Positions 20,459 through 60,387 of a stretch of DNA of 64,000 nt are shown here, one piece after another. A program made the translations under genes and the position numbers. The first letter of the stretch is position 1. Each line of letters starts with the position of its first letter. Below the pieces are notes generated by a model. It worked only from the letters and a program-made list of their open reading frames with translations. It was not told the origin of the DNA and did no database searches. The stretch comes from Hemiscyllium ocellatum (taxonomy: Eukaryota), in assembly GCF_020745735.1 (NCBI RefSeq), contig NC_083449.1, forward strand, positions 13,193,868 through 13,257,867, read 5' to 3'.

Positions 20459-20557
20459 TTTTATACACTGACAGCGTCAGTAATGCTAATGAGGGATGGG
20501 GAAGGCCTGCTCTCTGATTGGCTGCCTTACAGGAAATATTCACCTCGCTCTGATTGG
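20459..20557 (-). promoter_or_regulatory. H2B promoter: TATA, octamer variant, two CCAAT boxes
   Basis: Minus-strand TATAAAA (about 20459-20465), ATTAGCAT (20483-20490), CCAAT (20517-20521, 20553-20557): the classic H2B layout. Confidence 0.8.
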
Positions 20558-32163: not shown

Positions 32164-32320
32164 GAGAGGCAGCAGGAGCAGGGAGCTGACGGCAGGTTGT
32201 CTCTGCGCCGTCCGCTCGCTGCCTTGAAGTTGCTCAGTGCCGCCCCCCAGCAGCTTCATTGCTGACCCAGTTCAGACTCACCCAGAGAGAGAGAGAGAGA
32301 TTCAGCACAGAGTTCTCGAC

Positions 32321-32968
32321 ATGAGCGACAGTGCAGCCGCCGAAACGGCTCCTCCAGCCTCCGCTCCCACCAAAGCCAAGGCTCCCAAGAAAAAGGCGGC
32401 GTCTCCCAGGAAAAGACCAGCCGGTCCCAAGTTGGGCGAGCAGATTCTGAGGATTGTCGAGCAGTCCAAGGATCGCAAGGGGATGTCCCTTTTCAGTATA
32501 AAGAAAGCGTTGGACAAAAGCGGGGTCGAGGTGGACAAGCGCAACTCCCAGATCAAGATGTGTATCAGGAGGGCCCTGGCGAAAGGCTCCCTGGTTCAGG
32601 TCAAGGGCCAGGGCGCCTCCGGCTCCTTCAAACTCGCTCAGACTCGAGGCAAGGCAGAAGGGGCCAAGAAGGTGAGAAGAGCAGCAAGCGGCAAGAAAGT
32701 GGTCGGGAAGAAAACACCAGCCAAGAAGGCTACAGTGAAAAAATCCCCAGCCAAGAAACCAACAGCTAAGAAAGCGACAGCTAAGAGACCAGGCGCCGGG
32801 AAGGCAGCCCCGCCAAAGAAAAAGCGAGTGATCAAAGCAGCGCCGAAGAAAAAGGCTTCCGTGAAGAAGGTGAAAAAGGCCAAGAGCCCCAAGTCTCCCA
32901 AACCCCTCAGCAAATCGGTTAAAGCCAAGACCCAGGCCAAAGTGACCAAGAGAGCAGCAAAGAAATGA
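32321..32968 (+). CDS. H1: Histone H1 (replication-dependent linker histone), 215 aa
   Basis: MSDSAAAETAPP..globular domain GPKLGEQI..KGSLVQVKGQGASGSFKL, Lys/Ala/Pro tail with SPK motifs; ATG at 32321. Confidence 0.97.
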   Translation: MSDSAAAETAPPASAPTKAKAPKKKAASPRKRPAGPKLGEQILRIVEQSKDRKGMSLFSIKKALDKSGVEVDKRNSQIKMCIRRALAKGSLVQVKGQGASGSFKLAQTRGKAEGAKKVRRAASGKKVVGKKTPAKKATVKKSPAKKPTAKKATAKRPGAGKAAPPKKKRVIKAAPKKKASVKKVKKAKSPKSPKPLSKSVKAKTQAKVTKRAAKK

Positions 32969-35227: not shown

Positions 35228-35233
35228 TTTATT
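35228..35233 (-). terminator. Candidate poly(A) signal of the ZBP1-like gene
   Basis: AATAAA on the minus strand about 480 nt downstream of the stop at 35714. Confidence 0.5.
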
Positions 35234-35713
35234 CCAGGTAATTAGATCCTAATTACAGATAAACAGTTACAAATAAACAATTCCATACCATTTTTTTCCC
35301 CCAGTTCAGTAATCACGAACTCTATGCTATGTGTTTCTGCATCCCTTTCCTAACTGGTTAAAATATTGCACACAACTCAGACTGTTCCAGTAAACGTGTT
35401 TCTGCCGTAGTGCTGCTGCCATCTCTCTGCCCTCAGGTCTGAGGAAAGGTCATCCCCAAAATGTTAACACTGATTTCTCTCCAGGAGAGGCTGAGTGTTT
35501 CCAGCAATTTCTGGGTTTGTGTCCTCTCAGATTAAAGCATAGTCTTCGCTCAGCAGATTGAAGACGTGACCCAGATGACTCAGGAAAGCCAGTTTGGACA
35601 GGGTTACCTCGGAGGGGGATAAAATATCAGAAACCTATTCCATTTGGGACCCCGTGTTCTCCCGACACCAGGCGAAGCACCTCAACTCCCCAAACCCACC
35701 ATGATGGGAGTTT

Positions 35714-36045
35714 TCATTCTTCCTCAGTATTCTCAAAAAAGGGATCTTCACTTGAAGAACCATCACTCACAGGATCCTCGTTCACAGGGTCAGACCAGAA
35801 CTTCATCTGGTTGCTGTTCCCAATCTGAAGACCAGAGAGCTGGTCAGCGATGATGTCGATGTGAAACGCAGTGCCTGTGCCCGAGACTTCTCCCTCCTTG
35901 GCCTCAGTACCACCAGTCTCTGAGACTCCTCCCTCCTGGGGCTCAGTACCACCAGTCTCTGAGACTCCTCCCTCCTGGGATTCAGTACCACCAGTCTCTG
36001 AGACTCCTCCCTCCTGGGACTCAGTAGCGACAGTTTTCAAACCGC
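35714..36045 (-). CDS. ZBP1: ZBP1-like gene, terminal exon: 13-aa acidic repeats + RHIM (LQIGNSNQM) + stop
   Basis: Acceptor tctttttctggtcttgctcag|GC (phase 1); encodes GLKTVAT(ESQEGGVSETGGT)n..FHIDIIADQLSGLQIGNSNQMKFW..ENTEEE*; RHIM core at 35804-35830. Confidence 0.75.
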
Positions 36046-36359
36046 CTGAGCAAGACCAGAAAAAGACATTGACATTAACACCGTCCACCTCAGCATCCGC
36101 ACATCTCTCTGCCAGTGAAGGATGTTTCATCAGAGGTCACTCTCCAGGTAGCAGAAATGCAGCATGGATTTCTGCACAGCACGGCCCCATGAACACAACG
36201 TGCCAACAGTGGAGTCACTGGCTTTCTCAGTGATGGGTAAACATTGACCTCAGGACAGAGGGAAACACTCCCACCAGCACCATGGGTCCTTCAGTAATGG
36301 CTGTAGGATGTTTTAAATCAACTGTACGGCCGGTTTAACACCTCATCCACACTAGCACA

Positions 36360-37240
36360 CAGTGTGGCACTCCCTCAGCACTGAACCTCCGACAGTGCCC
36401 ACTCCCTCAGCACTGACCCCCCGACAGTGCCCGCTCCCTCAGCACTGACCCTCCGACAGTGCCCACTCCCTCAGCACTGACCCTCTGACAGTGCCCACTC
36501 CCTCAGCACTGACCCCCCGACAGTGCCCACTCCCTCAGCACTGACCCCCCGACAGTGCCCACTCCCTCAGCACTGACCCTCCGACAGTGCCCACTCCCTC
36601 AGCACTGATCCCCCGACAGTGCCCACTCCCTCAGCACTGACGCTCCGACAGTGCCCACTCCCTCAGCACTGATCCTCTGACAGTGCGGCACTCCCTCAGC
36701 ACTGACCCCCCGACAGTGCCCACTCCCTCAGCACTGACCCCCCGACAGTGCCCACTCCCTCAGCACTGACCCTCCGACAGTGCCCACTCCCTCAGCACTG
36801 ATCCCCCGACAGCGCGGCACTCCCTCAGCACTGACCCTCCGACAGTGCGGCACTCCCTCAGCACTGACCCTCCAACAGTGTGGCACTCCCTCAGCACTGA
36901 CCCTCCAACAGTGCCCACTCCCTCAGCACTGACCCTCCGACAGTGTGGCACTCCCTCAGCACTGACCCTCCGACAGCGCGGCACTCCCTCAGCACTGACC
37001 CTCCGACAGTGCGGCACTCCCTCAGCACTGACCCTCCCACAGTGCCCACTCCCTCAGCACTGACCCTCCGACAGTGCCCACTCCCTCAGCACTGACCCCC
37101 CGACAGTGCCCACTCCCTCAGCACTGACCCTCCGACAGTGCCCACTCCCTCAGCACTGACCCTCCGACAGTGCCCACTCCCTCAGCACTGACCCTCCGAC
37201 AGTGCCCGCTCCCTCAGCACTGACCCTCCGACAGTGTGCA
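36360..37240. repeat. 32-bp minisatellite (CCCTCAGCACTGACCCTCCGACAGTGCCCACT)n
   Basis: About 27 tandem copies; same unit at 47133-47577 and 48290-49296. Confidence 0.95.
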
Positions 37241-37465
37241 TGTCCAGCAGTCGCTTGAATGTCCTGAATGACCCTCCCTCCACCGCCACCACTAGCAACG
37301 CATTCCATGCATTCACAACTCTCGGACATTGGACTCCCCTGCGCCAGTGGATTTCGGAGGCTCAGGCATTAAGGACGAGAGGATAATGTCGGAGATGGGT
37401 GAGCCTACGACCTGGAGCAGCGGGCTAGCTGAAATGGCCTCAGCGAGGGACTGTGAGGTGGTTAC

Positions 37466-37726
37466 CTGCAGTGGGTCTCTCCTCACCCCGTTGCCCGGCA
37501 TCTCTTCTGCCAGTCATGGTGTTTTGGGAGCCCACTTGGACGTAGCAGTTACCGTGGGCACCACCGGTGATGTTATTGCTGGTGACCCCGTGCTGTTGGA
37601 TGTTGGTGATCTGGTCGCCAATGTGGTAGGTGATGGAATAATGGTAGTTGTTCATCTGGACACGGGGCTCTGCTCTGTCGGTCGGTGTTTTCGGCCACTC
37701 ACTTGTCCGACCGCTGCCTGCGGAAT
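37466..37726 (-). CDS. ZBP1: ZBP1-like gene, RHIM exon (VQVGSQNTM)
   Basis: Acceptor tgcttctttgtcag|AT (phase 1); donor GCAG|GTAACC at 37466 (alternative G|GTGAGG at 37487, same phase); N/Q/Y-rich segment ending ..GAHGNCYVQVGSQNTM; RHIM core 37515-37541. Confidence 0.8.
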
Positions 37727-37799
37727 CTGACAAAGAAGCAGGTAAAAGGGGAGACCAGTCAGCCCTACCTTCAGGTCAGACACCTGACCAATCCCACTC

Positions 37800-38590
37800 C
37801 CTTAGATAAATGCGAGGTGCTGCATTTTGGGAAAGCAAATCAGGGCAGGACTTGTACAGTTAACAGGAAGGTCCTGGGGAGTGTTGTTAAACAATGGGAG
37901 ACCTTGGAGTGCAGGTTCATAGCTCCTTGAATGTGCAGTCGCAAGTAGACAGGATAGTGAAGGTGGCGTTTGGTATGCTTTCCTTTATTGGTCAGAGCAT
38001 CGAGTATAAGCGTTGGGAGGTCAAGTTACGACTCTAAGGGACATTTGTTAGGCCCCTTCAGAACACTGTGTGCAATTCTGGTTTCCCAACTTTTGGAAGG
38101 ATATTGTGAAACTTGAATGGGTTCACAAACTAATCATAAGGATGTTGGAGGGTTTGAACGATAGGGAGAGGGTTAGAATAGGCTGGGGCTGTTTTCTCTG
38201 GAGCGTTGGAGGCTGAGAGGTGACCTTATAGAGGTTTATAAACTCATGAGGGGCATGGGTAGGGTAAACAGACAAGGTATTTTCCCTGGGGTGGGGGAGT
38301 CCAGAATTAGAGGGCATAGGTGAGAGGGGAAAAATTTAAAGGTGACCTAAGGGACAAATTTTTCTCCCAGAGGGTGGCGTGTGTATGGAATGAGCTGCCA
38401 GAGAAAGTGGAGGAGGCTGGTACAATTGCAACTTTTAACAGGCATCTGAATGGGTATATGAGCAGGAAGGGTTTGGGGGGATGTGGGCCAAGTGCTGGCA
38501 AATGGGACTAAATTAGGTTAGGATATCAGGTCAGCATAGATGAGTTGGACCTGCTGGGTCTGTCCGTGCTGTACATCTCTGAGTCTATGA
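37800..38590 (+). mobile_element. CR1 LINE 3' fragment (intronic)
   Basis: DKCEVLHFGKANQGR..FSQRVACVWNELPE motifs. Confidence 0.85.
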
Positions 38591-38614
38591 CCTCTTTCCC
38601 TTGTCTTCTGTAAA

Positions 38615-39908
38615 TAGAGACATGTACAACACGGAAAAAAAGACCCTTCGGTCCAACTCGTCCATGCCGACCAGATATCCCAACCTAATCTAGGCCCATA
38701 TCCCTCCAAACCCTTCCTATTCATATACCCATCCAAATGCCTTTTAAATGTTGCAATTTACCAGCCTCCACCACATCCTCTGGCAGCTCATTCCATACCC
38801 ATACCACCCTCCGTGGGAAAAAGTTGCCTCAAATGTCTCTTTTATATCTTTCCCCTCTCACCCTAAACCTATGCCCTCTAGTTCTGGACTCCCCGACCCC
38901 AGGGAAAAGACTTTTGTCTATTTACCCTATCCATGCCCCTCATGATTTTATAAACCTCTATAAGGTCACCCCTCAGCCTCCGACGCTCCAGGGAAAACAG
39001 CCCCAGCCTGTTCAGCCTCTCCCTATAGCTCAGATCCTCCAACCCTGGCAACATCCTTGTAAATCTTTGCTGAACCCTTTCAAGTTTCACAACATCTTTC
39101 CGATAGGAAGGAGACCAGAATTGCACGCAAAATTCCAACAGTGGCCTAACTAATGTCCTGTACAGCTGCAACATGACCTCCCAACTCCTGTACTCAATAC
39201 TCTGACCAATAAAGGAAAGCATACCAAACGCCTTCTTCACTATCCTATCTACCTGCGACTCCACTTTCAAGGAGCTATGAACCTGCACTCCAAGGTCTCT
39301 TTGTTCAGCAACATCCCTAGGACCTCACCATTAAGTGTCTAAGTCCTGCTAAGATTTGCTTTCCCAAAATGCAGCACCTCGCATTTATCTGAATTAAACT
39401 CCACCTGCTACCTCTCAGCCCATTGGCCCATCTGGTCCAGATCCTGTTGTAATCTGAGGTAACCCTTTTCGCTGTTCACTACACCTCCAATTTTGGTGCT
39501 ATCTGCAAACTTACTAACTGTACCTCTTATGCTCACATCCAAATAATTTATACAAATGACAAAAAGGTAAAGGGCCCAGCACCGATCCTTGTGGCACTCC
39601 ACTGGTCACGGGCCTCCAGTCTGAAAAACAATCCTCCACCACCACCCTCTGTCTTCTACCTTTGAGCCAGTTCTGTATCCAAATGGCTAGTTGTCCCTGT
39701 ATTCCATGAGATCTAACCTTGCTAATCAGTCTCCCATGGGGAATCTTGTCGAACACCTTACTGAAGTCCATATAGATGACATCTACCGCTCTGCCCTCAT
39801 CAATCTTCTTTGTTACTTCTTCAAAACACTCAAGACATGATTTCCCACGCACAAAGCCATGTTGACTATCCCTAATCAGTCCTTGCCTTTCCAAATACAT
39901 GTACATCC
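38615..39908 (-). mobile_element. CR1 LINE 3' portion (intronic), tail-to-tail with the preceding copy
   Basis: ORFs 38878..39288, 39408..39602 and 39514..39906(-) with QHGFVRGKSC, GVPQGSVLGP, FADSTK. Confidence 0.92.
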
Positions 39909-40507
39909 TGAACCTCGAAGTATAATATCCATGTGGCCATGCTGAAGCATTAAAGAGGTTATTTTTGTCATTTCTGTCTTTCCAAAAAAGAAGGCATTTT
40001 TACACTAGAGGCATTGATCTTTCTATTTGGAAAGCCGGTATATAGATTGTGAGGTCTTGGGATTTTATTTTTAAAGTTGGAAAGGTAGCAGTCGCCGAAC
40101 AGGATGTGGCCAGCTCTTCCAGACCAGGATTTAAGGTTTTTTTTACATTCAGCTTTCAGCAGCTGTTTATGATAACTCAACTAGGGCAGGAGCTGCTGGA
40201 GTCTCGCTTTATTCTTTTACATCAACAAATGTTGGGAGTTCTTGGCGGGTACGGCAGCAGCTACGGAGAAATATCTGAGGTAACGTTTCGGGGCGGACAA
40301 CTCTTCCTCAGAACGGTCACTTGGCCCGAAACATTAACTGTAATTCCTCTCCACACATTGCTGCCAGACCTACTGAGCGTTTCCAGCAATTTCTGTTTAT
40401 GGTTTCTGATTTACACCATCTGCAGTTTTTTTTATTTTGGTTTTTACTTAGAAATTATTTCCTCCCTCTCTCAGATACAGATGGAAGTTTGGGTTCTATC
40501 CTTTGAT

Positions 40508-41172
40508 TTATATACAGAATAACAGATACCCCGGGAGGGAGTTAAAAAAAACCTTAAATCCTGGTCTGTAAGAGCTGGCCACATCCTGTTCGGCGACTCC
40601 TACCTTTCCAATCTAATCGAGGGGTTCGGGGTGGGGTTTATATACAGAATAACAAATACCCCAGGAGGGAGTTACAGACTGGAATCTAATCGAGGGGTTC
40701 GGGGTGGGGTTTATATACAGAATAACAGATACCCCGGGAGGGAGTTACAGACTGGAATCTAATCGAGGGGTTCGGGGTGGGGTTTATATACAGAATAACA
40801 GATACCCCGGGAGGGAGTTACAGACTGGAATCTAATCGAGGGGTTCGGGGTGGGGTTTATATACAGAATAACAGATACCCCGGGGAGGGAGTTACAGACT
40901 GGAATCTAATCGAGGGGTTCGGGGTGGTTTATATACAGAATAACAGATACCCCGGGAGGGTGTTACAGTCTGGAATCTAATCGAGGGGTTCAGGGTGGTT
41001 TATATACAGAATAACAGATACCCCGGGAGGGGGTTACAGACTGGAATCTAATCGAGGGGTTCGGGGTGGGGTTTATATACAGAATAACAGATACCCCGGG
41101 AGGGAGTTACAGACTGGAATCTAATCGAGGGGTTCGGGGTGGTTTATATACAGAATGACAGATACCCCGGGA
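40508..41172. repeat. ~73-bp minisatellite (TTTATATACAGAATAACAGATACCCCGGGAGGGAGTTACAGACTGGAATCTAATCGAGGGGTTCGGGGTGGGG)n
   Basis: TATACAGAAT recurs at 40641, 40714, 40787, 40860 and onward; about 8 copies. Confidence 0.95.
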
Positions 41173-41289
41173 TGGGTTTAACCTGCAAGACAGGACTGTT
41201 TTTTCTGAATTTGCCTTTTTGCCAAAGGGATGCGCTTATGGGGTGTAACTGTGTTAGAATAATTCATTAGTCCCTGGAGGAGGGGCTAG

Positions 41290-42190
41290 AAGGTTGGGTG
41301 AGCAAGTTTGCGGATGATACAAAAGTCGGTGGAGTTGTTGACAGTGAGGAAGGATGTGGCAGGTTACAGCGGGATATAGATAAGCTGCAGAGCTGGGCAG
41401 AAAGGTGGCAAATGGAGTTCAATGTAGCTAAGTGTGAAGTGATTCACTTTGGTAAGAGTAACAAGAAGATGGAATACTGGGCTATTGGTCAGATACTTGT
41501 GGATGAGCAGAGGGATCTTGGTGTCCATGTACACAGATCTCCGAAAGTTGCCACCCAGGTAAATAGTGCTGTGAAGAAGGCATATGGTGTACTGGCTTTT
41601 ATTGGTAGAGGAATTGAGTTCCGGAGTCCTGAGGTCATGTTGCAGTTGTATAAGACTCTGGTGCGGCCGCATCTGGAGTATTGTGTGCAGTTTTGGTCGC
41701 CATACTATAGGAAGGATGTGGAGACACTGGAACGGGTGCAGAGGAGATTTACCAGGATGTTGCCTGGCATGGTAGGAAGATCGTATGAGGAAAGGCTGAG
41801 GCACTTGGGGCTGTTTTCATTGGAGAAAAGAAGGTTCAGGGGTGACTTGATAGAGGTGTACAAGATGATTAGGGGTTTAGATAGGGTTGACCATGAGAAC
41901 CTTTTTCCACGTATGGAGTCAGCTATTACGAGGGGGCATAGCTTTAAATTAAGGGGTGGTAGGTATAGGACAGATGTTAGGGGTAGATTCTTTACTCAGC
42001 GGGTTGTGAGTTCATGGAATGCCCTGCCAGTAGCAGTGGTGGACTCTCCCTCTTTATGGGCATTTAAGCGGGCATTGGATAGGCATATGGAGGATAGTAG
42101 GCTAGTGTAGGTTAGGTGGGCTTGGATCGGCGCAACATCGAGGGCCGAAGGGCCTGGACTGCGCTGTATTTTTCTATGCTCTATGTTCTA
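41290..42190 (+). mobile_element. Young CR1 LINE 3' portion (intronic, antisense to the ZBP1-like gene)
   Basis: Uninterrupted ORF 41298..42110 [22 protein letters not shown].. Confidence 0.95.
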
Positions 42191-42780
42191 ATAGTTACCG
42201 CATCGATTATACTTGTTGCGTTTTTCAAGAGTTAAGCTATTTTCAGATCTCGTTTCTATGGTTGTATTTTAACTATAGTGTTCAAATAAATTATATTTTC
42301 CTTAACATCGACCCATCGAATTGCATCTGTAACACGGCACGTTACATTTTCCATTGAAAGTAAAACAATGGTAAGAGTCACGTCTACCTTTTTAAAATAT
42401 TTTGAGGGGGGGGCTGGTCTGGTCCATTGCCCCCACTCCACATCGCTTTTGTGAAAATCTGGTCGACTCTGCTCCCACAGATGCCAACTCCCTGCCTCGA
42501 AATGAGATGTTGCCACACTCCCCTCACTCCACTACTTTCCTCGACCTTTCCCCTCGCTCCCAGTGTCTCTCTCTGCTTCCCAGCTCCCCTCACAGGGCCG
42601 AAGGTGGCCATTAAGCCCATCAGAAGAGCATCCCACCCAGACCTCTCTGTCTCTATCACACACACATCAAATAAAAATGGTCTCTTGTCATCCCTCACAC
42701 CCCAACACCCCCTCCTTTCCCACATTCTCTCTCTCTCCAAGGCACTCTGGATATCCTCCTGGATGTGGATGGACCCCCAC

Positions 42781-42966
42781 CTCCTTCCCTTGCTGGTAGG
42801 ATGCTCCATGTCACACCATCCTGCCTGACCAGGCCTTGCCTCTTGAGGGCGTACAGCGATGGGTTGACGGATTTCTTGGATTCCTTGCCCATGAACTTGG
42901 CGAGCTGCAGGGCAGTAGCGGACCCCCGAGATGACAGCTGAATGAGAATGTCCTGCTCGAGTGGAC
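42781..42966 (-). CDS. ZBP1: ZBP1-like gene, second Zalpha (Zalpha2/Zbeta) exon
   Basis: Acceptor ..ccgtccggcccag|GT, donor GAG|GTGGGG, 186 nt, phase 1-1; PLEQDILIQLSSRGSATALQLAKFMGKESKKSVNPSLYALKRQGLVRQDGVTWSI has the Zalpha N-x-x-L-Y and beta-wing W signature. Confidence 0.88.
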
Positions 42967-43074
42967 CTGGGCCGGACGGGGGGGGAGATAACGAAGGGAC
43001 ATCAGTGAACAAGCAATGGCTGCCTCGACTCTCAGGAGCCAACCCCACGTGGCCCCAAACAAACCACCTACCGC

Positions 43075-46000
43075 CCCCAACTTTCTCAGTCTCACACCCC
43101 CCACCCCCAACTTTCTCAGTCTCACACTCCCCAACTTTCTCAGTCTCACACCCCCCTCCCCCAACTTTCTCAGTCTCACCCCCCCAACTTTCTCAGTCTC
43201 ACACCCTCGCCCCCAACTTTCTCAGTCTCACAATCCCGCCCCCAACTTTCTCAGTCTCACACCCCCCAACTTTCTGAGTCTCACAATCCCGCCCCCAACT
43301 TTCTCAGTCTCTCACACACCCCCAACTTTCTCAGTCTCACAACCCCCACCCCCAACTTTCTCAGTCTCACACCCCCCCAACTTTATCAGTCTCACACCCC
43401 CACCCCCAACTTTCTCAGTCTCACACCCCCCGCCCCCAACCTTCTCAGTCTCACACCCCCGCCCCCAACTTTCTCAGTCTCTCACACACTCCCCAACTTT
43501 CTCAGTCTCACACCCCCGCCCCCAACTTTCTCAGTCTCTAACACACTCCCCAACTTTCTCAGTCTCACCACCCCGCCCCCAACTTTCTCAGTCTCTCACA
43601 CACTCCCCAACTTTCTCAGTCTCTCACACACTCCCCAACTTTCTCAGTCTCACACCCCAGCTCCCAACTTTCTCAGTCTCACACCCCGCCCCCAACTTTC
43701 TCAGTCTCACAATCCCGCCCCCAACTTTCTCAGTCTCACACCCCCCAACTTTCTCAGTCTCACAATCCCGCCCCCAACTTTCTCAGTCTCTCACACACCC
43801 CCAACTTTCTCAGTCTCACAACCCCCACCCCCAACTTTCTCAGTCTCACACCCCCCCAACTTTATCAGTCTCACACCCCCACCCCCAACTTTCTCAGTCT
43901 CACACCCCCCGCCCCCAACCTTCTCAGTCTCACAATCCCGCCCCCAACTTTCTCAGTCTCACACCCCCCAACTTTCTCAGTCTCACACCCCCGCCCCCAA
44001 CTTTCTCAGTCTCACACCCCCCACCCCCAACTTTCTCAGTCTCACACACCCCCACCCCCAACTTTCTCAGTCTCACACCCCCAACTTTCTCAGTCTCACA
44101 CACCCCACCCCCAACTTTCTCAGTCTCACACTCCCCAACTTTCTCAGTCTCACACCCCCCTCCCCCAACTTTCTCAGTCTCACACCCCCCACCCCCAACC
44201 TTCTCAGTCTCACACCCCCGCCCCCAACTTTCTCAGTCTCTCACACACTCCCCAACTTTCTCAGTCTCTCACACACTCCCCAACTTTCTCAGTCTCACAC
44301 CCCAGCTCCCAACTTTCTCAGTCTCACACCCCCGCCCCCAACTTTCTCAGTCTCTCACACACTCCCCAACTTTCTCAGTCTCACCACCCCGCCCCCAACT
44401 TTCTCAGTCTCTCACACACTCCCCAACTTTCTCAGTCTCTCACACACTCCCCAACTTTCTCAGTCTCACACCCCAGCTCCCAACTTTCTCAGTCTCACAC
44501 CCCCGCCCCCAACTTTCTCAGTCTCACACCCCCCACCCCCAACTTTCTCAGTCTCACACACCCCACCCCCAACTTTCTCAGTCTCACACCCCCAACTTTC
44601 TCAGTCTCACACACCCCACCCCCAACTTTCTCAGTCTCACACTCCCCAACTTTCTCAGTCTCACACCCCCCTCCCCCAACTTTCTCAGTCTCACACCCCC
44701 CACCCCCAACTTTCTCAGTCTCACACCCCCCTCCCCCAACTTTCTCAGTCTCACACCCCCCACCCCCAACTTTCTCAGTCTCACACCCCCGCCCCCAACT
44801 TTCTCAGTCTCACACTCCCCAACTTTCACAGTCTCACACCCCCAACTTTCTCAGTCTCACAACCCCCACCCCCAACTTTCTCAGTCTCACACCCCCGCCC
44901 CCAACTTTCTCAGTCTCACACACCCCGCCCCCAACTTTCTCAGTCTCACACACCCCCAACTTTCTCAGTCTCACAACCCCCACCCCCAACTTTCTCAGTC
45001 TCACACCCCCGCCCCCAACTTTCTCAGTCTCACACTCCCGCCCCCAACTTTCTCAGTCTCACACCCCCCACCCCCAACTTTCTCGGTCTCACACCCCCCG
45101 CCCCCAACTTTCTCAGTCTCACACCCCCACCCCCAACTTTCTCAGTCTCACACACCCACCCCCAACTTTCTCAGTCTCACACCCCCCACCCCCAACTTTC
45201 TCAGTCTCACACCCCCCCAACTTTCTCAGTCTCACAACCCCCACCCCCAACTTTCTCAGTCTCACACCCCCAACTTTCTCAGTCTCACACACCCCCACCC
45301 CCAACTTTCTCAGTCTCACACCCCCGCCCCCAACTTTCTCAGTCTCACACACCCCCACCCCCAACTTTCTCAGTCTCACACCCCCGCCCCCAACTTTCTC
45401 AGTCTCACACTCCCGCCCCCAACTTTCTCAGTCTCACACCCCCACCCCCAACTTTCTCAGTCTCACATCCCCCGCCCCCAACTTTCTCAGTCTCACACCC
45501 CCCACCCCCAACTTTCTCAGTCTCACACACCCCCAACTTTCTCAGTCTCACACCCCCACCCCCAACTTTCTCAGTCTCACACCCCCCGCCCCCAACTTTC
45601 TCAGTCTCACAACCCCCACCCCCAACTTTCTCAGTCTCACACCCCCAACATTCTCAGTCTCACACCCCCCACCCCCAACTTTCTCAGTCTCACACCCCCG
45701 CCCCCAACTTTCTCAGTCTCACACACCCCCAACTTTCTCAGTCTCACACCCCCCACCCCCAACTTTCTCAGTCTCACACCCCCGCCCCCAACTTTCTCAG
45801 TCTCACAACCCCCACCCCCAACTTTCTCAGTCTCACACCCCCACCCCCAACTTTCTCAGTCTCACACACACCCCCAGCCTTCTCAGTCTCACACACACTC
45901 CCCCAGCCTTCTCAGTCTCACACACTCCCCCAGCCTTCTCAGTCTCACACACACTCCCCCAGCCTTCTCAGTCTCACACACACTCCCCCAGCCTTCTCAG

Positions 46001-46750
46001 TCACTCACACACACCCCCCCAGCCTTCTCAGTCTCTCACACACTCCCCCAGCCTTCTCAGTCACTCACACACACCCCCGGCCTTCTCAGTCACTCACACA
46101 CACACCCCCAGCCTTCTCAGTCTCACACACACTCCCCCAGCCTTCTCAGTCTCACACACACTCCCCCAGCCTTCTCAGTCTCACACACACACCCCCAGCC
46201 TTCTCAGTCTCACACACACTCCCCCAGCCTTCTCAGTCTCACACACACTCCCCCAGCCTTCTCAGTCACTCACACACTCCCCCAGCCTTCTCAGTCTCAC
46301 ACACTCCCCCAGCCTTCTCAGTCACTCACACACTCCCCCAGCCTTCTCAGTCTCACACACCCCCAGCCTTCTCAGTCTCTCACCACACCCCCAGCCTTCT
46401 CAGTCACTCACACACACCCCCAGCCTTCTCAGTCTCACACACACCCCCAGCCTTCTCAGTCTCACACACTCCCCCAGCCTTCTCAGTCTCACTCACACAC
46501 CCCCAGCCTTCTCAGTCATTCACACACACCCCCAGCCTTCTCAGTCTCACACACACTCCCCCAGCCTTCTCAGTCTCACTCACACACCCCCAGCCTTCTC
46601 AGTCTCACACACACTCCCCCAGCCTTCTCAGTCTCACACACACTCCCCCAGCCTTCTCAGTCTCACACACACACCCCCAGCCTTCTCAGTCACTCACACA
46701 CTCCCCCAGCCTCTCAGTCTCTCACACACTCCCCCAGCCTGCTCAGTCTC
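43075..46750. repeat. 3.7-kb variable-length minisatellite (CCCCAACTTTCTCAGTCTCACAC..), switching to a CCCCAGCCTTCTCAGTC variant at about 45870
   Basis: Well over 100 copies of the core; source of the spurious 1296-aa ORF. Confidence 0.97.
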
Positions 46751-47132
46751 TCACATTCCCAAATTTCCCAGTGTCACCTGTCCACGTTTCTCAGTCTCTC
46801 CTCTGCCCAGTTTTCTCTGTCTCACCCCATCCATTCTATTCCTCTCTCCCTCCTGTTATTGTCCCCTTCCCCCCCCCCTCCATCCCCAAACCTCCCCCCC
46901 ACATAGGAGCTGGGAAGGGACAATTGGACATGACTCTGAATCACCCTAAAGGTCCACCAGATGGCCGGATCTGAAAGCCAGGCGTGATTGTGGGATGTGA
47001 TTTCAGCTGCACGAGACTCTGTTATTTTTCAGAGTGGGGGAGTAGAGACAGACGTGGCAGGGGTCTTTAGGGGTTAAAGGAAAGCTGCCGAATGAGAGCC
47101 TTTGGATCGGTGCCACTGCAGATTGTTACAGA

Positions 47133-47577
47133 CTCTCCGACAGTGCCCACTCCCTCAGCACTGACCCTCCGACAGTGCGGCACTCCCTCAGCACGGACCC
47201 TACGACAATGCCCACTTCCTCAGCACTGACCCTCCGACAGTGCCCACTCCCTCTGCACTGACCCTCCGACAGTGCCCACTCCCTCTGCACTGACCCTCCG
47301 ACAGTGCCCCCTCCCTCAGCACTGACCCTCCGACAGTGTCCACTCCCTCAGCACTGACCCTCCGACAGTGCCCACTCTCTCAGCACTGACCCTCCGACAG
47401 TGCTGCACTCCCTCAGCACTGACCCTCCGACAGTGCCCACTCCCTCAGCACTGACCCTCCGACAGTGCCCGCTCCCTCAGCACTGACCGTACGACAGTGC
47501 CCGCTCCCTCAGCACTGACCGTACGACAGTGCCCATTCCCTCAGCACTGACCCTCCGACAGTGCCCCCTCCCTCAGT
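47133..47577. repeat. 32-bp minisatellite
   Basis: Same unit as 36360-37240. Confidence 0.93.
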
Positions 47578-47931
47578 AAACTCATATAGATTTCCTTTTA
47601 TGGGGGAACTGATGTGAATTATTTTGACCGTGTCTCACAGGGTGGGAGGTAAATTAATATTTAGGGATTGTAATTATTTAATCCAGCTCTGTGAGACTCA
47701 ATCGTCAAATGTAGTCTTCTCGAGTGACCCATTATAACCTTCCCATCGATGTTAATTTGATAGGAATCTGGCTTGAATCCTCCCACAGTATTTTATGAAA
47801 AGGTTATTTGGAACAAACACAGCTCCCAGATGGTTTCATCCAATCTCATTTCATCTATTAAGCTCCTGATGGATCGATCTAACCCCACCCACACTGTGCA
47901 AATTAATCCCATTGGAGAGGATCTCTGTGAC

Positions 47932-47995
47932 ATGCCCAGGGTCCCAATGCCAGGGTCCCAATGCCAGGGTCCCAATGCCAGGGTCCCAATGCCCT
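47932..47995. repeat. 14-bp tandem repeat (ATGCCAGGGTCCCA) x4
   Basis: Directly visible. Confidence 0.85.
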
Positions 47996-48183
47996 GGCTG
48001 TGCAATGGACAGAGATTAAAGAGAGAAAGGCCAGTGCTGTATCAGACTTACCAAGGCTATTTCCATTGTGGCTCACAACAGGACCCGCCATTGTGTTCAC
48101 TGGCACGAGCGAGGGAGCTGGGGAAGGTCAGACAAGTTTAAGCATTTTCAGTACCAACCCCCCCCCCCCCCCCACCCCCCCCC

Positions 48184-48227
<44 letters not shown>

Positions 48228-48289
48228 GTCAGGGGGGTTAGGAATCACAAACAGGGTTAGGGAGATCTGTGGGGGTCCTGTGACCATGC

Positions 48290-49296
48290 ATCGACAGTGC
48301 GGCATTCCTTAAGTGCTGACCCTCCGACAGTGCCAGCTCCCTCAGCACTGATCCTCCGACAGTGCCCACTCCCTCAGCACTGACCCTCCGACAGTGCCCG
48401 CTCCCTCAGCACTGACCGTCCGACAGTGCCCACTTCCTCAGCACTGACCCTACGTCAGTGCCCACTACCTCAGCACTGACCCTCCGACGGTGTTGCACTC
48501 CCTCAGCACTGACCCTCTGACAGAGTCCACTCCCTCAGCACTGACCCTCCGACAGTGCCCACTCCCTCAGCACTGACCCTCCGACAGTGCCCGCTCCCTC
48601 AGCACTGACCCTCTGATAATGCCCACTCCCTCAGCACTGACCCTCCGACAGTGTGGCACTCCCTCAGCACTGACCCTCCGACAGTGCGGCACTCCCTCAG
48701 CACTGACCCTCCGACAGTGCAGCACTCCCTCAGCACTGACCCTCCGACAGTGCCCTTCCCTCAGCACTGACCCTCTGACAGAGCCCAGTCCCTCAGCACT
48801 GACCCTCCGACAGTGCGGCGTTCCCCCTGCACTGACCCTTCGACAGTGCAGCACTCCCTCAGCACTGACCCTCCGACAGTGCCCACTCCCTCAGCACTGA
48901 CCCTCCGACAGTGCAGCACTCCCTCAGCACTGACCCTCCGACAGTGCAGCACTCCCTCAGCACTGACCCTCCGACGGTGTTGCACTCCCTCAGCACTGAC
49001 CCTCCGACAGTGCAGCACTCCCTCAGCACTGACCCTCCGACAGTGCAGCACTCCCTCAGCACTGACCCTCCGACGGTGTTGCACTCCCTCAGCACTGACC
49101 CTCCAACAGTACCCACTCCCTCAGCACTGACCCTTCCACAGTGCCCGCTCCCTCAGCACTGACCCTTCCACAGTGCCCGCTCCCTCAGCACTGACCCTCC
49201 AACAGTACCCACTCCCACAGCACTGACCCTCCCACAGTGCCCACTCCCTCAGCACTGACCCTCCCACAGTGCCCACTCCCTCAGCACTGACCCTCT
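48290..49296. repeat. 32-bp minisatellite
   Basis: About 31 copies of the same unit. Confidence 0.95.
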
Positions 49297-49379
49297 GATG
49301 CAGCCCGTCCCCTGGGAGTCTGGATTCAGTGCTCAGTGTAGGGTGCTTCAGACCTGAGCGAATGTCTGGCAGTACGTAC

Positions 49380-49577
49380 GTGTGGGAGTTGTATCGTCCG
49401 CGGTTAATCCACACAACATCCAGTGCTTGTCATCTGCCTTCTTTATCTGCCCTTGTCTCTCCAACTGATACAAACAGCGCTGGACGGTTGCTTTTGGCTG
49501 ATGTAGCTCCTGAGCAAGACAGATGGCTGACTTCCGACTGGATTCCTGCAAACACACCATGATCCTCTGATGCAGGT
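49380..49577 (-). CDS. ZBP1: ZBP1-like gene, first Zalpha exon
   Basis: Acceptor ctgctttgcacag|AC, donor CAC|GTACGT, 198 nt, phase 1-1; (x)LHQRIMVCLQESSRKSAICLAQELHQPKATVQRCLYQLERQGQIKKADDKHWML: winged-helix Zalpha pattern with PK, LY and W. Confidence 0.82.
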
Positions 49578-49834
49578 CTGTGCAAAGCAGGGAGTATGGA
49601 ATATATGGAAGTTAATTTGGCAGTTACATCGTTAATTTAGCGTTATCATGCATGCACGGGATTACTTGACAAGGGTCAGGTAACAGGTAATGGTAGCACA
49701 CTTTAATAGGCTCGTTAAATCACGTGATAAGTTAATGTTAAAGATGATGGTGATGTCAGATGGGAGTGTGGCAAAAATTGATTAGTTTACAAAGACAAGT
49801 ATGTATTGGTTTATGATTAGTTATGCACCAGGTA

Positions 49835-50270
49835 AGGATGGTCTAACATATGAGGAATGGCTGAGGATCCTGGGATTGTATTCATTGGAGTTTAGAAGAT
49901 TAAGGAGAGACTTAATAGAGACGTACAAGATAATACATGCCTTGGAAAGGGTGGACGCTAGGAAATTGTTTCCGTTAGGCGAGGAGACTAGGACCCGTGG
50001 ACACAGCCTCAGAATTAGAGGGGGTCAATTTAGAACAGAAATGCGGAGACATTTCTTCAGCCAGAGAGTGGGGGGCCGGTGGAATTCATTGCCGCAGAGT
50101 GCAGTGGAGGCCGGGACACTAAATGTCTTCAAGGCAGAGATTGATAGATTCTTGTTGTCTCGAGGAATTAAGGGCTACAGGGAGAATGCGGGTAAGTGGA
50201 GTTGAAATGCCCAGCAGCCATGATTGAATGGGCCGAATGGCCTTACTTCCACTCCTATGTCTTCTGTTCT
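49835..50270 (+). mobile_element. CR1 LINE 3' end
   Basis: GLTYEEWLRILGLYSLEFRRLR..; same subfamily as 27740-28840. Confidence 0.9.
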
Positions 50271-50624
50271 TATGGAATTAGGGCAGGAAAGACCGAAGAT
50301 TTAGAGATGTCGGTGTTGGGCTGGGGTGGACAAAGCCAAAAATCACACAACACCAGGTTATAGTCCAACAGGTTTAATTGGAAACAATTTCCCTGAAGAA
50401 GGGGCAGCGCTCCGAAGCGAGTTTGCTTCCAACGTTGTGTGATTTTTAACTTGATAGAGAGAAGAACCTCAATGAGGTGAGTGGACAGACAGGAGAGACG
50501 TGTTCTGACAGCCACAGCTTCGATTTGCAAATCAAACATCGACTTTTCTGTCTCCTGTCAATGTTCTCAGAGGGTGGCGTGGTCTGGCCACAACAGGAGC
50601 TCCACGTGAAACACAACGCAGTGT

Positions 50625-50635
50625 GAAACCGAAAG
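50625..50635. promoter_or_regulatory. ISRE/IRF-binding motif
   Basis: GAAACCGAAAG matches GAAANNGAAA; about 1 kb 5' of the Zalpha1 exon. Confidence 0.5.
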
Positions 50636-50809
50636 GGAAGGAGAAACAGATAGATAGAGAGAGACAGAGAGAGAGAGAGAAAACACAGACACAATAATAG
50701 GATTACCCGCCTCCAGCAACTTACAGAGGAACAGGGGGCGATTCAGCCCCCACCCTTCATCAGACTGTTACTACATGGGAACAAAGAAACCATTCAACGT
50801 CTTGCGAGT

Positions 50810-51270
50810 CTCACTATCCCCCAATACCCCACACACCCTGTAGGTCTAACTATCACCCCCCAATACCCCACACACCCTGTGGGTCACACTATTCCCCCCC
50901 CCAATACCCCACACACCCTGTGGGTATCACTATCACCCCCCAATACCCCCCACACCCTGTGGGTCTCACTATCCCCCCCCCAATACCCCACACACCCTGT
51001 GGGTATCACTATCCCCCCCCCCAATACCCCACACACCCTATGGGTATCACTATCCCCCCCCCAATACCCCACACCCTGTGGGTCTCACTATCCCCCCCCC
51101 CAATACCCCACACACCCTGTGGGTCTCACTATCCCCCCCCCCAATACCCCACACACCCTGTGGGTCTCACTATCCCCCCCCAATACCCCCCACACCCTGT
51201 GGGTCTCACTATCCCCCCCAAATACCCCCCACACCCTGTGGGTCTCACTATCACCCCCCAATACCCCAGA
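50810..51270. repeat. ~40-bp minisatellite (GTGGGTCTCACTATCCCCCCCCCAATACCCCACACACCCT)n
   Basis: About 11 tandem copies. Confidence 0.92.
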
Positions 51271-51536
51271 TACTATGTGAGTCTCACTTATCCCTTCCCC
51301 CTCTCCCACCCTGGATCCGCCTGCTGGGTCATATCGACCCCCCTCCTCAACAATGATTTCTCTTTCCCCTCCCACCCCCTCCCCCTTCTACTGACCTAAC
51401 CTCTATCTGTGATTCCCCAGTTACCTCGGAGATGCCAGAATCGAAACTGACCCGGTCTCTCTCTCTTCCTCCTCTGTCTCCGACCCTCCCTCTGTCTCTG
51501 TCCACCCCCTCCATATCATTCTGTCTGTCTGTCGCT

Positions 51537-52271
51537 NNNNNNNNNNNNNNNNNNNNNNNNNNNNNNNNNNNNNNNNNNNNNNNNNNNNNNNNNNNNNNNN
51601 NNNNNNNNNNNNNNNNNNNNNNNNNNNNNNNNNNNNNNNNNNNNNNNNNNNNNNNNNNNNNNNNNNNNNNNNNNNNNNNNNNNNNNNNNNNNNNNNNNNN
51701 NNNNNNNNNNNNNNNNNNNNNNNNNNNNNNNNNNNNNNNNNNNNNNNNNNNNNNNNNNNNNNNNNNNNNNNNNNNNNNNNNNNNNNNNNNNNNNNNNNNN
51801 NNNNNNNNNNNNNNNNNNNNNNNNNNNNNNNNNNNNNNNNNNNNNNNNNNNNNNNNNNNNNNNNNNNNNNNNNNNNNNNNNNNNNNNNNNNNNNNNNNNN
51901 NNNNNNNNNNNNNNNNNNNNNNNNNNNNNNNNNNNNNNNNNNNNNNNNNNNNNNNNNNNNNNNNNNNNNNNNNNNNNNNNNNNNNNNNNNNNNNNNNNNN
52001 NNNNNNNNNNNNNNNNNNNNNNNNNNNNNNNNNNNNNNNNNNNNNNNNNNNNNNNNNNNNNNNNNNNNNNNNNNNNNNNNNNNNNNNNNNNNNNNNNNNN
52101 NNNNNNNNNNNNNNNNNNNNNNNNNNNNNNNNNNNNNNNNNNNNNNNNNNNNNNNNNNNNNNNNNNNNNNNNNNNNNNNNNNNNNNNNNNNNNNNNNNNN
52201 NNNNNNNNNNNNNNNNNNNNNNNNNNNNNNNNNNNNNNNNNNNNNNNNNNNNNNNNNNNNNNNNNNNNNNN
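51537..52271. other. Assembly gap (735 N)
   Basis: Run of N. Confidence 1.
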
Positions 52272-52395
52272 TCCCTCTTACCCCCAGTCTCTCAGTCTCA
52301 TCCCTACCCCCCCCCACCCCCCCACTGATTCCTCTCCCCCACCCCACCTCTCTATCTTTCTCCCTCTGTTTTCTGTTCTCAATTTGATTTATCAG

Positions 52396-52413
52396 GGAAT
52401 CGAAACTGAAAGT
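52396..52413. promoter_or_regulatory. ISRE/IRF-E motif, candidate ZBP1-like promoter
   Basis: GGAATCGAAACTGAAAGT: perfect GAAANNGAAAGT with an extra upstream half-site. Confidence 0.6.
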
Positions 52414-52635
52414 TAACGTCGCTGACACCGGATAGTTTCAGCCCCGGAATCGAATGTGTTTTAACCACAGCCAAACCCCTCCTTGGACCCTCAGCATCTG
52501 GCCCTTTCCCCAAATCTCTTCACCACCACCCACCCCCCAATCCTCCAGCACTGTGTGTCTCTCTCTCTCTCTCTCCCTCCCCTTTACTGGCTGCCTGCAT
52601 CTTTTCCTTTCATTTCTCTTTCACATTCTCTGTGC

Positions 52636-52670
<35 letters not shown>

Positions 52671-53174
52671 CCCCCCACCCATCTCTCTTTTTCCCCATCC
52701 ACCCATCTCTCTCTCACCCCCCCACCCCATCTCTCTCACCCTCTCGTTTGCTCATCAGACCCACCCCCAACAAATTCAGGGGAAACTGCTACCAGCCGAC
52801 CCCATCCCCTCGGTCAGGATGAACCTCTCACCAACTGATGAACGCGAACCCACCCTGATCCGTCCTGGGAGACCATACTTCAACACCCTGGGACATCCTG
52901 GGTCACAGGAGAGGACGGTCTGGGAACAAGAGCCGGCAGGGAGTTTGGAAGTGAGTTTTCGGGCAGTTTTGGAAGTGAATTTTAAGGCACGCCTTCTCAT
53001 GACTGAGAACTTGCGAGGGCGGTCTTCAGATTTCTCTGAAGACTTTTCAGTTAACCTTTTAAGCACCTTCTTCCTACTTTAAAACACTTCCAAATCTTTA
53101 TCTCATTCAAAAAAAATAAAGATTTTAAGAAACTTTTCAAAATACTTTTGATTATTTATGATGCAGAGATAGGA

Positions 53175-60280: not shown

Positions 60281-60387
60281 ATGATGTTCCATAACTGAAT
60301 CTCTCCGTCCCAGACCACACCCTGGTGAATCTCCTCTGCACCTCTTCCAAGTGCAATCACATCCTTTTCCTACAACGTGACGACTAG

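What the first reader, a model, noticed from the sequence alone, without database searches (positions are those of the whole stretch)
35714..49577. Hidden spliced ZBP1-like gene (Zalpha-Zalpha-RHIM-RHIM) in a shark genome
Seen in sequence: four minus-strand exons (49577-49380, 42966-42781, 37726-37466, 36045-35714) have AG/GT boundaries, are all phase 1, and join into one open frame of about 325 aa. Two exons encode Zalpha-like winged helices (..PKATVQRCLYQLERQG..HW; ..KKSVNPSLYALKRQG..DGVTW) and two carry RHIM cores (VQVGSQNTM; LQIGNSNQM). Established knowledge: tandem Zalpha plus RHIMs is the defining architecture of ZBP1/DAI, the Z-nucleic-acid sensor that signals through RIPK3/RIPK1. From memory, the second domain closely resembles mammalian Zalpha2 (..VNP.LY.....L...DG.TW.I). 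ZBP1 is characterised mainly in mammals, whereas teleosts are known for the Zalpha kinase PKZ. Inference: this is a cartilaginous-fish ZBP1, which would imply that Z-RNA-triggered RHIM signalling dates to the jawed-vertebrate ancestor. The exons are split by about 13 kb of satellites and LINEs, so the gene is easy to miss.
Basis: partly seen in the sequence, partly recalled or inferred. Interest (0 to 1): 0.93.

Follow-up and report, generated by a model that had tools for sequence, protein, structure and literature searches.

The report
Shark ZBP1 gene, already annotated
The four exons are real and belong to the epaulette shark's version of the virus-sensing gene ZBP1. The gene is not hidden: it is already a database gene model, a sister shark's copy is already named ZBP1-like, and a 2025 study is cited as finding ZBP1 in cartilaginous fish.

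Summary
Each has AG/GT borders and the same phase, and joined they give an open frame of 325 codons ending in TGA.

The model is incomplete. The real gene has six coding exons. The six-exon splice translates to exactly XP_060712999.1, "uncharacterized protein LOC132837351" of Hemiscyllium ocellatum (361 aa).

Both Zalpha exons pass Pfam's z-alpha threshold. The predicted fold matches solved ZBP1, PKZ and ADAR1 Zalpha structures at 0.6-1.4 Å. The two RHIM cores are the only matches to the extended RHIM pattern in all six reading frames of the window. They are conserved in three other sharks, and the first RHIM is under strong purifying selection (dN/dS 0.125). The C-terminal half aligns collinearly with tetrapod ZBP1 (P = 1e-4).

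The ZBP1-like reading therefore holds, but "hidden" and "new" do not. The zebra shark orthologue is already named "Z-DNA-binding protein 1-like", coelacanth and amphibian ZBP1 are annotated, and a 2026 review cites a 2025 paper for ZBP1 in cartilaginous fish.

Small differences from tetrapod ZBP1:
- Gln replaces the Z-contact Asn in Zalpha1 of all four sharks.
- The second shark RHIM aligns best with mammalian RHIM-C, with a weaker match to RHIM-B.

The parts
52854..52896 (-). Coding part of exon 1: ATG at 52896, 14 codons plus 1 base, donor GTGGGT. The 5' UTR and promoter lie upstream and are undefined.
   Evidence: tblastn of P0073 residues 1-14 at 100% identity. The six-exon splice equals P0073. 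It was also found independently as an ATG-to-donor candidate.
49380..49577 (-). Exon 2 (198 nt): Zalpha1 winged helix. Z-contact positions are Gln47 (49480-49482, in place of the usual Asn), Tyr51 and Trp67.
   Evidence: Pfam z-alpha 26.8 bits against a cut-off of 21. PDB hits to PKZ and ZBP1 Zalpha. AlphaFold pLDDT 78-91. Foldseek match. Residues read.
48052..48117 (-). Exon 3 (66 nt): inter-Zalpha linker containing the conserved SLVP motif.
   Evidence: Exact peptide match with AG acceptor and GTAAGT donor. The splice equals P0073. Stegostoma has a 66-nt exon in the same position. LVP is conserved in the alignment.
42781..42966 (-). Exon 4 (186 nt): Zalpha2 winged helix with canonical Asn137, Tyr141 and Trp156.
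   Evidence: Pfam z-alpha 22.7 bits against a cut-off of 21. The best PDB hits are human ZBP1 Zalpha2. Foldseek match to 4ka4 with TM 0.89-0.93 and rmsd 0.6-0.7 Å.
37466..37726 (-). Exon 5 (261 nt): disordered region carrying the first RHIM. The core VQVGSQNTM is at 37515-37541.
   Evidence: Pattern match. Q228, G230 and N233 are invariant across sharks and tetrapods. hhalign P = 1.1e-4 against the tetrapod RHIM-A region. dN/dS 0.125.
35714..36045 (-). Exon 6, coding part (332 nt including TGA). It holds a 13-aa repeat of about 3.7 copies (39-bp repeat, 35883-36026), the second RHIM core LQIGNSNQM (35804-35830) and an acidic tail.
35228..35713 (-). Probable 3' UTR ending at the AATAAA signal (35228-35233).
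   Evidence: Sequence read and motif search. The transcript end itself was not verified.

Best explanation
This is the ZBP1 (DAI/DLM-1) orthologue of the epaulette shark Hemiscyllium ocellatum, RefSeq LOC132837351. It has six coding exons spread over about 17.7 kb of the minus strand (35228-52896). Satellites and LINE fragments inflate its introns.

Shown here:
- The exon structure and the 361-aa product.
- Two confident Zalpha winged-helix domains, followed by a disordered tail with two RHIM cores.
- No catalytic domain.
- Conservation in at least four sharks, with purifying selection strongest on the first RHIM.

Inferred from mammalian ZBP1:
- The Zalpha domains, certainly Zalpha2 and possibly the Gln-variant Zalpha1, bind left-handed Z-RNA or Z-DNA produced during infection or stress.
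- Ligand-driven clustering lets the RHIMs nucleate amyloid-like hetero-oligomers with the RHIMs of RIPK1 and RIPK3.
- This triggers cell death (an MLKL gene exists in Chondrichthyes according to PMC11476962) and/or NF-kB signalling.

All internal exons are phase 1-1 and multiples of 3 nt, so exon-skipped isoforms would stay in frame.
For: - The six-exon splice equals XP_060712999.1 exactly.
- Pfam z-alpha scores 42.8 bits over 2 stretches on the full protein, and each Zalpha exon alone passes the cut-off.
- AlphaFold gives two winged helices with pLDDT 75-91 and the rest below 50.
- Foldseek matches ZBP1, PKZ, ADAR1 and ORF112 Zalpha structures with TM 0.8-0.93 and rmsd 0.6-1.4 Å.
- The extended RHIM pattern occurs only twice in about 128,000 six-frame codons, both times in the coding frame.
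- Orthologues exist in Stegostoma, Mustelus and Heterodontus. The extended core pattern [IVL]Q[IVLF]G..N.[MLIV] is matched twice in Stegostoma (IQVGSQNTM, LQIGNSNQM) and once each in Mustelus (LQVGSRNTM) and Heterodontus (LQIGDNNKM). Their other motif is degenerate (FQIG in Mustelus, TQVG in Heterodontus).
- The alignment with tetrapod ZBP1 is collinear, with invariant residues in Zalpha1, Zalpha2 and both RHIM blocks.
- hhalign of the C-terminal halves gives P = 1.1e-4, against 0.09 for a reversed control.
- Shark, coelacanth, newt and mammalian Zalpha1 share a one-residue deletion in the helix 2-helix 3 loop.
- dN/dS against Stegostoma is 0.49 overall, 0.125 for the first RHIM and 0.35 for Zalpha2.
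- The AU test does not reject shark Zalpha2 grouping with tetrapod ZBP1 Zalpha. The constrained tree is 22 lnL units better, p = 0.71.
- The frame ends in a stop followed by AATAAA, and the next gene downstream is histone H1 on the other strand.
Against: - Pfam RHIM (PF12721) does not score any shark protein. The same model also misses or only marginally scores accepted ZBP1s in the control (20.8, 17.4 and 14.4 bits, or none, against a cut-off of 20).
- The free Zalpha tree is unresolved and did not place shark Zalpha2 with tetrapod ZBP1 Zalpha2.
- Synteny could not be tested. The neighbours in the window are histone genes and repeats, and the Stegostoma flanks hold only repeats.
- Zalpha1 has Gln where all other Zalpha domains compared here have the Z-contact Asn, so its Z-binding is uncertain.
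- There is no expression, binding or signalling data. Presence of RIPK3 in this species was not checked.
Confidence: 0.8

Rival explanations
1. It is an independently assembled Zalpha + RHIM adaptor that works like ZBP1 but is not its orthologue. For example, Zalpha exons of ADAR1 or PKZ type could have fused to a RHIM-bearing tail in the shark lineage.
For: - The Zalpha domain tree (67 columns) is unresolved, and the free search put shark Zalpha2 among ADAR-type domains.
- The best PDB sequence hit of Zalpha1 is PKZ.
- No synteny evidence is available.
Against: - The architecture is collinear with tetrapod ZBP1, including the flanks of the first RHIM, an LVP linker motif and a distal IGNSN-M block.
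- hhalign gives P = 1.1e-4.
- A Zalpha1 loop deletion is shared with coelacanth, newt and mammalian ZBP1.
- The nearest non-shark neighbours of Zalpha1 are newt and coelacanth ZBP1.
- The constrained ZBP1 tree is better than the free tree.
Confidence: 0.1
2. It is a decaying or non-functional gene: an expressed relic whose open frame survives by chance, with the repeat-inflated introns as a sign of relaxed constraint.
For: - Overall dN/dS is fairly high at 0.49.
- The introns are full of satellites and LINEs.
- The Stegostoma copy shows a frame shift inside the Zalpha1 exon.
- The tail carries a species-specific coding repeat.
Against: - The 361-codon frame is intact and all splice sites are canonical.
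- RHIM and Zalpha contact residues are conserved across four sharks and tetrapods.
- dN/dS is 0.125 on the first RHIM at dS 0.61.
- Fast evolution and disordered, repeat-rich tails are normal for innate immune sensors.
Confidence: 0.05
3. It is the N-terminal part of a PKZ-like or ADAR-like gene whose catalytic exons lie elsewhere.
For: Zalpha domains are shared with PKZ and ADAR1, and Zalpha1's best sequence hit is PKZ.
Against: - The frame ends in TGA with AATAAA 480 nt downstream.
- The RefSeq product ends at the same stop.
- No kinase or deaminase match appears in the protein.
- Downstream lies a histone cluster, beginning with H1 on the opposite strand.
- Three other sharks have the same short architecture.
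Confidence: 0.02

Closest known systems
Mammalian ZBP1 (DAI/DLM-1)
   Same: - Two N-terminal Zalpha domains, each on its own exon here, then a disordered tail with RHIMs and no enzyme domain.
- Zalpha2 has the Asn/Tyr/Trp contacts and superposes on human ZBP1 Zalpha2 at 0.6-0.7 Å.
- The first RHIM aligns with RHIM-A including its flanks.
   Different: - The shark protein has two RHIM cores rather than three.
- In the collinear alignment the second shark RHIM falls on mammalian RHIM-C, which has lost the Gln in mammals. It also resembles RHIM-B more weakly (P = 0.038).
- Zalpha1 has Gln instead of the contact Asn.
- The inter-RHIM spacer is a shark-specific 13-aa repeat.
- Full-length identity is only 22-24%.
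- No function has been tested.
Stegostoma tigrinum 'Z-DNA-binding protein 1-like' (P0004), with the Mustelus asterias XP_078062172.1 and Heterodontus francisci XP_067878232.1 uncharacterized proteins
   Same: - They are orthologues, 61%, 41% and 38% identical over the full length.
- The RHIM cores are the same or nearly the same.
- In Stegostoma the exon sizes and phases match (66, 180 against 186, and 261 nt).
   Different: - The Stegostoma gene spans 5.8 kb against about 17.7 kb here.
- Its model starts at an internal ATG because of a frame shift in the Zalpha1 exon.
- The tail repeats differ in each species.
Coelacanth and amphibian ZBP1 (Latimeria XP_005990666.1, Lissotriton, Xenopus, Bufo, Microcaecilia)
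   Same: - They are annotated non-mammalian ZBP1s with tandem Zalpha domains.
- The Zalpha1 domains of newt and coelacanth are the nearest non-shark neighbours of shark Zalpha1.
   Different: - Amphibian Zalpha1 and Zalpha2 are intermixed or homogenised in the tree.
- The Latimeria model is short (206 aa) and shows no RHIM.
Teleost PKZ
   Same: Two N-terminal Zalpha domains. Shark Zalpha1 is 27% identical to goldfish PKZ Zalpha in structure space, with rmsd 1.0 Å.
   Different: PKZ carries an eIF2alpha kinase domain and no RHIM. The shark gene has neither a kinase match nor further exons.
ADAR1 p150 Zalpha/Zbeta and the viral Zalpha proteins (poxvirus E3, CyHV-3 ORF112)
   Same: They share the Zalpha fold.
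   Different: They carry deaminase and dsRBD domains, or are single-Zalpha viral antagonists. None has a RHIM.

Membership tests
ZBP1/DAI | Two N-terminal Zalpha (winged-helix, Z-nucleic-acid-binding) domains | tested here: met
   - Pfam PF02295 scores 42.8 bits over 2 stretches on the full protein, and 26.8 and 22.7 bits on the single exons against a cut-off of 21.
- AlphaFold pLDDT is 75-91 for residues 12-72 and 101-161.
- Foldseek gives TM 0.8-0.93 to solved Zalpha domains.
ZBP1/DAI | Z-contact triad Asn/Tyr/Trp in Zalpha2 | tested here: met
   N137, Y141 and W156 are invariant in the 12-sequence alignment.
ZBP1/DAI | Z-contact triad Asn/Tyr/Trp in Zalpha1 | tested here: inconclusive
   Tyr51 and Trp67 are present. 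Gln47 replaces Asn in all four sharks, whereas all other Zalpha domains compared have Asn. The effect on binding is unknown.
ZBP1/DAI | At least one RHIM with the core tetrad (I/V/L)-Q-(I/V/L)-G followed by xxNx(M/L) | tested here: met
   VQVGSQNTM and LQIGNSNQM are the only matches in six frames of the window. They are conserved in sharks, and Q/G/N are invariant with tetrapod RHIM-A. dN/dS is 0.125.
ZBP1/DAI | RHIM recognised by a curated profile (Pfam PF12721) | tested here: inconclusive
   There is no hit for any shark protein. In the control, accepted ZBP1s score 20.8, 17.4 or 14.4 bits, or nothing, against a cut-off of 20. A shark profile touches a 92-aa PDB chain (12kl_B) named ribonucleotide-reductase large-subunit-like protein, possibly a herpesviral RHIM protein, only at E = 1.
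ZBP1/DAI | No catalytic domain; a short adaptor-type protein | tested here: met
   The protein is 361 aa. Pfam finds only winged-helix families. The frame ends in a stop followed by AATAAA.
ZBP1/DAI | Orthology by phylogeny | tested here: inconclusive
   - The Zalpha tree is unresolved.
- The AU test does not reject a ZBP1 clade, p = 0.71.
- The C-terminal profile match gives P = 1.1e-4.
ZBP1/DAI | Orthology by conserved synteny | not testable with these tools
   The window neighbours are histone genes and repeats. The 10-kb Stegostoma flanks hold only repeats. No tetrapod locus was available.
ZBP1/DAI | Binds Z-RNA/Z-DNA, recruits RIPK3/RIPK1 through RHIMs, and is interferon-inducible | not testable with these tools
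   Only hints are available. IRF/ISRE-like GAAANNGAAA motifs cluster in intron 1 (8 in the window against 2.8 expected). MLKL is reported in Chondrichthyes (PMC11476962).
PKZ | C-terminal eIF2alpha kinase domain | tested here: not met
   There is no kinase family in Pfam, no further coding exons, and the RefSeq product ends at the same stop.
ADAR1 | dsRNA-binding domains and an adenosine deaminase domain | tested here: not met
   Pfam finds neither.

The most novel reading that the evidence does not exclude
Shark ZBP1 may preserve an ancestral two-RHIM layout. Its distal RHIM keeps a full LQIG tetrad at the position of the degenerate mammalian RHIM-C, which would make tetrapod RHIM-B a later duplicate. 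Its Zalpha1 uses Gln in place of the otherwise universal Z-contact Asn. If so, ligand recognition or RHIM wiring in the earliest-branching ZBP1s would differ from the mammalian model.
Probability: 0.3. Interest if true: 0.4.

Novelty: already known. Interest (0 to 1): 0.2.

Why it matters
That would contradict older statements that fish lack DAI/ZBP1 (for example PMC7582293, 2020).

That point has already been made:
- NCBI's annotation names the zebra shark orthologue ZBP1-like, and coelacanth ZBP1 is annotated.
- A 2026 review cites Sun et al. 2025 for ZBP1 in cartilaginous fish.

What this window adds is modest:
- A verified six-exon structure for the epaulette shark gene, which RefSeq still labels "uncharacterized".
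- A proposed name for it.
- Two small lineage features worth a bench test: Gln in Zalpha1, and a two-RHIM layout whose distal motif aligns with RHIM-C.

Tried and rejected
- Pfam RHIM on the RHIM exons, on 45-aa sub-windows and on full proteins gave no shark hit. The control shows the 22-position model is marginal even for accepted ZBP1.
- phmmer of the RHIM sub-windows against PDB found nothing relevant. The shark profile against PDB gave only an E = 1 touch on a 92-aa chain named ribonucleotide-reductase large-subunit-like protein.
- An early guess placed exon 1 and the promoter near 50.5-50.6 kb, at an ISRE-like TTTCGGTTTC and an ATG. It was dropped when the true exon 1 at 52854-52896 was fixed by the RefSeq protein.
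- The word-indexed protein search with the four-shark alignment was swamped by low-complexity words. It returned only three known proteins.
- The Zalpha domain tree (147 domains, 67 columns) was too short to resolve orthology.
- Synteny from the Stegostoma locus was uninformative.
- Sun et al. 2025 and Tummers & Green 2022 are not in the held library, so the literature claim rests on the review that cites them. Several keyword searches returned irrelevant papers.
- I did not fetch the Hemiscyllium locus from other sources, so as to respect the rule on the N gap (51537-52271, in intron 1).
- The spliced protein was never typed into a tool. Exon references and the database id P0073 were used instead.

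Full report
**Observation**

Translating the four stated minus-strand intervals shows each is open only in the frame that starts two bases in. Each is preceded by AG, and the first three are followed by GT. Joined, they give 325 codons ending in TGA at 35714-35716. The quoted motifs are present.

**Domain tests on the exons alone**

Pfam z-alpha (PF02295) scores the first exon at 26.8 bits and the second at 22.7 bits, both above the curated cut-off of 21. Nothing scores on the two RHIM exons.

Sequence search of PDB with the Zalpha2 exon is led by human ZBP1 Zalpha2 (2l4m, 3eyi, 4ka4). The Zalpha1 exon is led by goldfish PKZ, followed by mouse ZBP1 Zalpha1.

The extended RHIM pattern [IVL]Q[IVL]G..N.[MLIV] occurs only twice in the roughly 128,000 codons of the six-frame translation. 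Both occurrences are in the claimed exons and frame, at 37515-37541 and 35804-35830.

**Identity of the gene**

A phmmer search of the Zalpha2 exon against 1.84 billion representative proteins returned 72 hits. One was a 301-aa protein with nearly identical RHIM cores. A follow-up search named it "Z-DNA-binding protein 1-like [Stegostoma tigrinum]". The same search returned a 361-aa protein, [quoted passage not shown], XP_060712999.1.

Both extra pieces are in the window:
- Exon 1 at 52854-52896. I had already listed this as an ATG-to-donor candidate.
- A 66-nt exon at 48052-48117, with AG and GTAAGT borders.

The six-exon splice (1086 nt) translates to exactly the RefSeq protein. The window is therefore epaulette shark DNA, and the gene is already modelled, though unnamed. 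An AATAAA lies 480 nt past the stop.

**Surroundings**

Downstream of the gene lies a histone cluster: H1 at 32228-32965 (+), H2B at 20027-20476 (-), H2A at 11771-12214 (-), H3 at 10542-10964 (+) and H4 at 9077-9394 (+). LINE reverse-transcriptase fragments are scattered through the window. No kinase or deaminase exon exists downstream, so the PKZ and ADAR alternatives fail.

The introns hold:
- a 29-bp satellite of 3.7 kb;
- a 32-bp satellite in three introns;
- a 73-bp repeat and LINE pieces;
- an assembly gap (51537-52271), which I did not try to fill.

**Structure**

AlphaFold2 with a three-shark alignment gives two confident winged helices: residues 12-72 (pLDDT 78-91) and 101-161 (pLDDT 75-87). 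The rest of the protein is a low-confidence tail, with short strands at both RHIMs.

Foldseek against PDB gives single-domain matches:

| Target | TM | rmsd |
|---|---|---|
| Human ZBP1 Zalpha2 (4ka4) | 0.89-0.93 | 0.6-0.7 Å |
| ZBP1-nucleic-acid complex (9j89) | 0.90-0.91 | not noted |
| PKZ (4kmf) | 0.88 | 1.0 Å |
| ADAR1 Zalpha | not noted | not noted |
| ORF112 | not noted | not noted |

**Relation to ZBP1**

A 12-sequence alignment of four sharks with frog, caecilian and mammalian ZBP1 is collinear. It shows:
- invariant Leu-Tyr and Trp in Zalpha1;
- invariant Val-Asn-Pro-x-Leu-Tyr and Trp in Zalpha2;
- an LVP motif in the linker exon;
- invariant Gln, Gly and Asn in the first RHIM, together with its NxIxQxG flank;
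- a distal IGNxN block.

Profile-profile comparison of the post-Zalpha halves, sharks against tetrapods, gives P = 1.1e-4 over a collinear path from RHIM-A to RHIM-C. A reversed control gives 0.09. The second shark RHIM lands on mammalian RHIM-C and also resembles RHIM-B more weakly (P = 0.038).

A tree of 147 Zalpha domains is unresolved. The nearest non-shark neighbours of shark Zalpha1 are newt and coelacanth ZBP1. Zalpha1 shares a one-residue loop deletion with them and with mammalian Zalpha1. Forcing shark Zalpha2 into the tetrapod ZBP1 clade improves the likelihood by 22 units (AU p = 0.71).

Orthology is therefore well supported by architecture and not contradicted by phylogeny. It is not proven by synteny.

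**RHIM caveat**

Pfam's 22-position RHIM model hits no shark protein. Among accepted ZBP1s in the control it gave 20.8, 17.4 and 14.4 bits, or nothing, against a cut-off of 20. That negative result therefore carries little weight.

**Constraint**

The Stegostoma locus has the same exon sizes and phases within a 5.8-kb gene. Nei-Gojobori dN/dS between the two sharks is as follows:

| Region | dN/dS |
|---|---|
| Whole coding sequence | 0.49 |
| Zalpha2 | 0.35 |
| First RHIM with flanks (dS 0.61) | 0.125 |

The gene evolves fast but is constrained, as expected for an innate immune sensor.

**Differences from tetrapod ZBP1**

All four sharks have Gln at the Zalpha1 position of the Z-contact Asn. 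The inter-RHIM spacer carries species-specific repeats. Here it is a 13-aa unit repeated 3.7 times, encoded by a 39-bp repeat.

**Novelty**

- The product is in RefSeq.
- The sister-species orthologue is named ZBP1-like.
- Coelacanth, caecilian, newt, frog and toad ZBP1 are annotated.
- A 2026 review states, citing Sun et al. [quoted passage not shown]
- MLKL is reported in Chondrichthyes (PMC11476962).

**Verdict**

This is a correct and careful reading of a real gene, with two exons missed. The finding is already known. The function is inferred from mammalian ZBP1 and is untested in any shark.

Noticed in passing
window 9077-12214, 20027-20476, 32228-32965: A histone gene cluster lies downstream of the ZBP1-like gene: H4 (+), H3 (+), H2A (-), H2B (-) and linker histone H1 (+). 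All are intronless open frames with Pfam histone hits. H4 itself is named from its sequence; its only Pfam hit is the histone-fold family CENP-T_C.
   Followed up: partly
window 36368-37236, 47131-47576, 48292-49295: The same 32-bp satellite (unit CACTCCCTCAGCACTGACCCTCCGACAGTGCC) sits in three different introns of the gene. A separate 29-bp satellite fills 43074-46754 (130 copies) and a 73-bp repeat fills 40610-41172. These repeats make the gene about three times longer than its Stegostoma orthologue.
   Followed up: partly
window 57679-60369: A satellite block is free of stop codons in all six reading frames, giving spurious ORFs of up to 896 aa. It is a trap for ORF-based gene finders.
   Followed up: no
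window 50625-50634, 51357-51366, 52402-52411, 52613-52622: IRF/ISRE-like GAAANNGAAA cores cluster in intron 1, close to exon 1. GAAACTGAAA lies about 440 nt downstream of the exon 1 donor. The window holds 8 matches against 2.8 expected. This could reflect interferon inducibility but is unverified.
   Followed up: partly
L001 9964-10163 (Stegostoma tigrinum): The zebra shark Zalpha1 exon changes reading frame at a run of A's, relative to the epaulette shark exon. NCBI's model therefore starts at an internal ATG and lacks the first half of Zalpha1. This could be a real lesion or a homopolymer assembly error.
   Followed up: partly
window 35883-36026; P0015, P0016: The tail between and after the RHIMs carries a different tandem peptide repeat in each shark: ESQEGGVSETGGT here, GPPSE-type in Mustelus, TEDRGRGASESGR-type in Heterodontus. 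The Heterodontus model also has a long repetitive N-terminal extension that may be an annotation artefact.
   Followed up: no
window 51537-52271: A 735-base run of N lies inside intron 1 of the gene.
   Followed up: no
window 14565-18000, 27756-28775, 38881-42107, 53993-56583, 61650-63527: Several LINE-type reverse-transcriptase fragments lie on both strands. Some are inside intron 4 of the gene (RVT_1 hits).
   Followed up: partly
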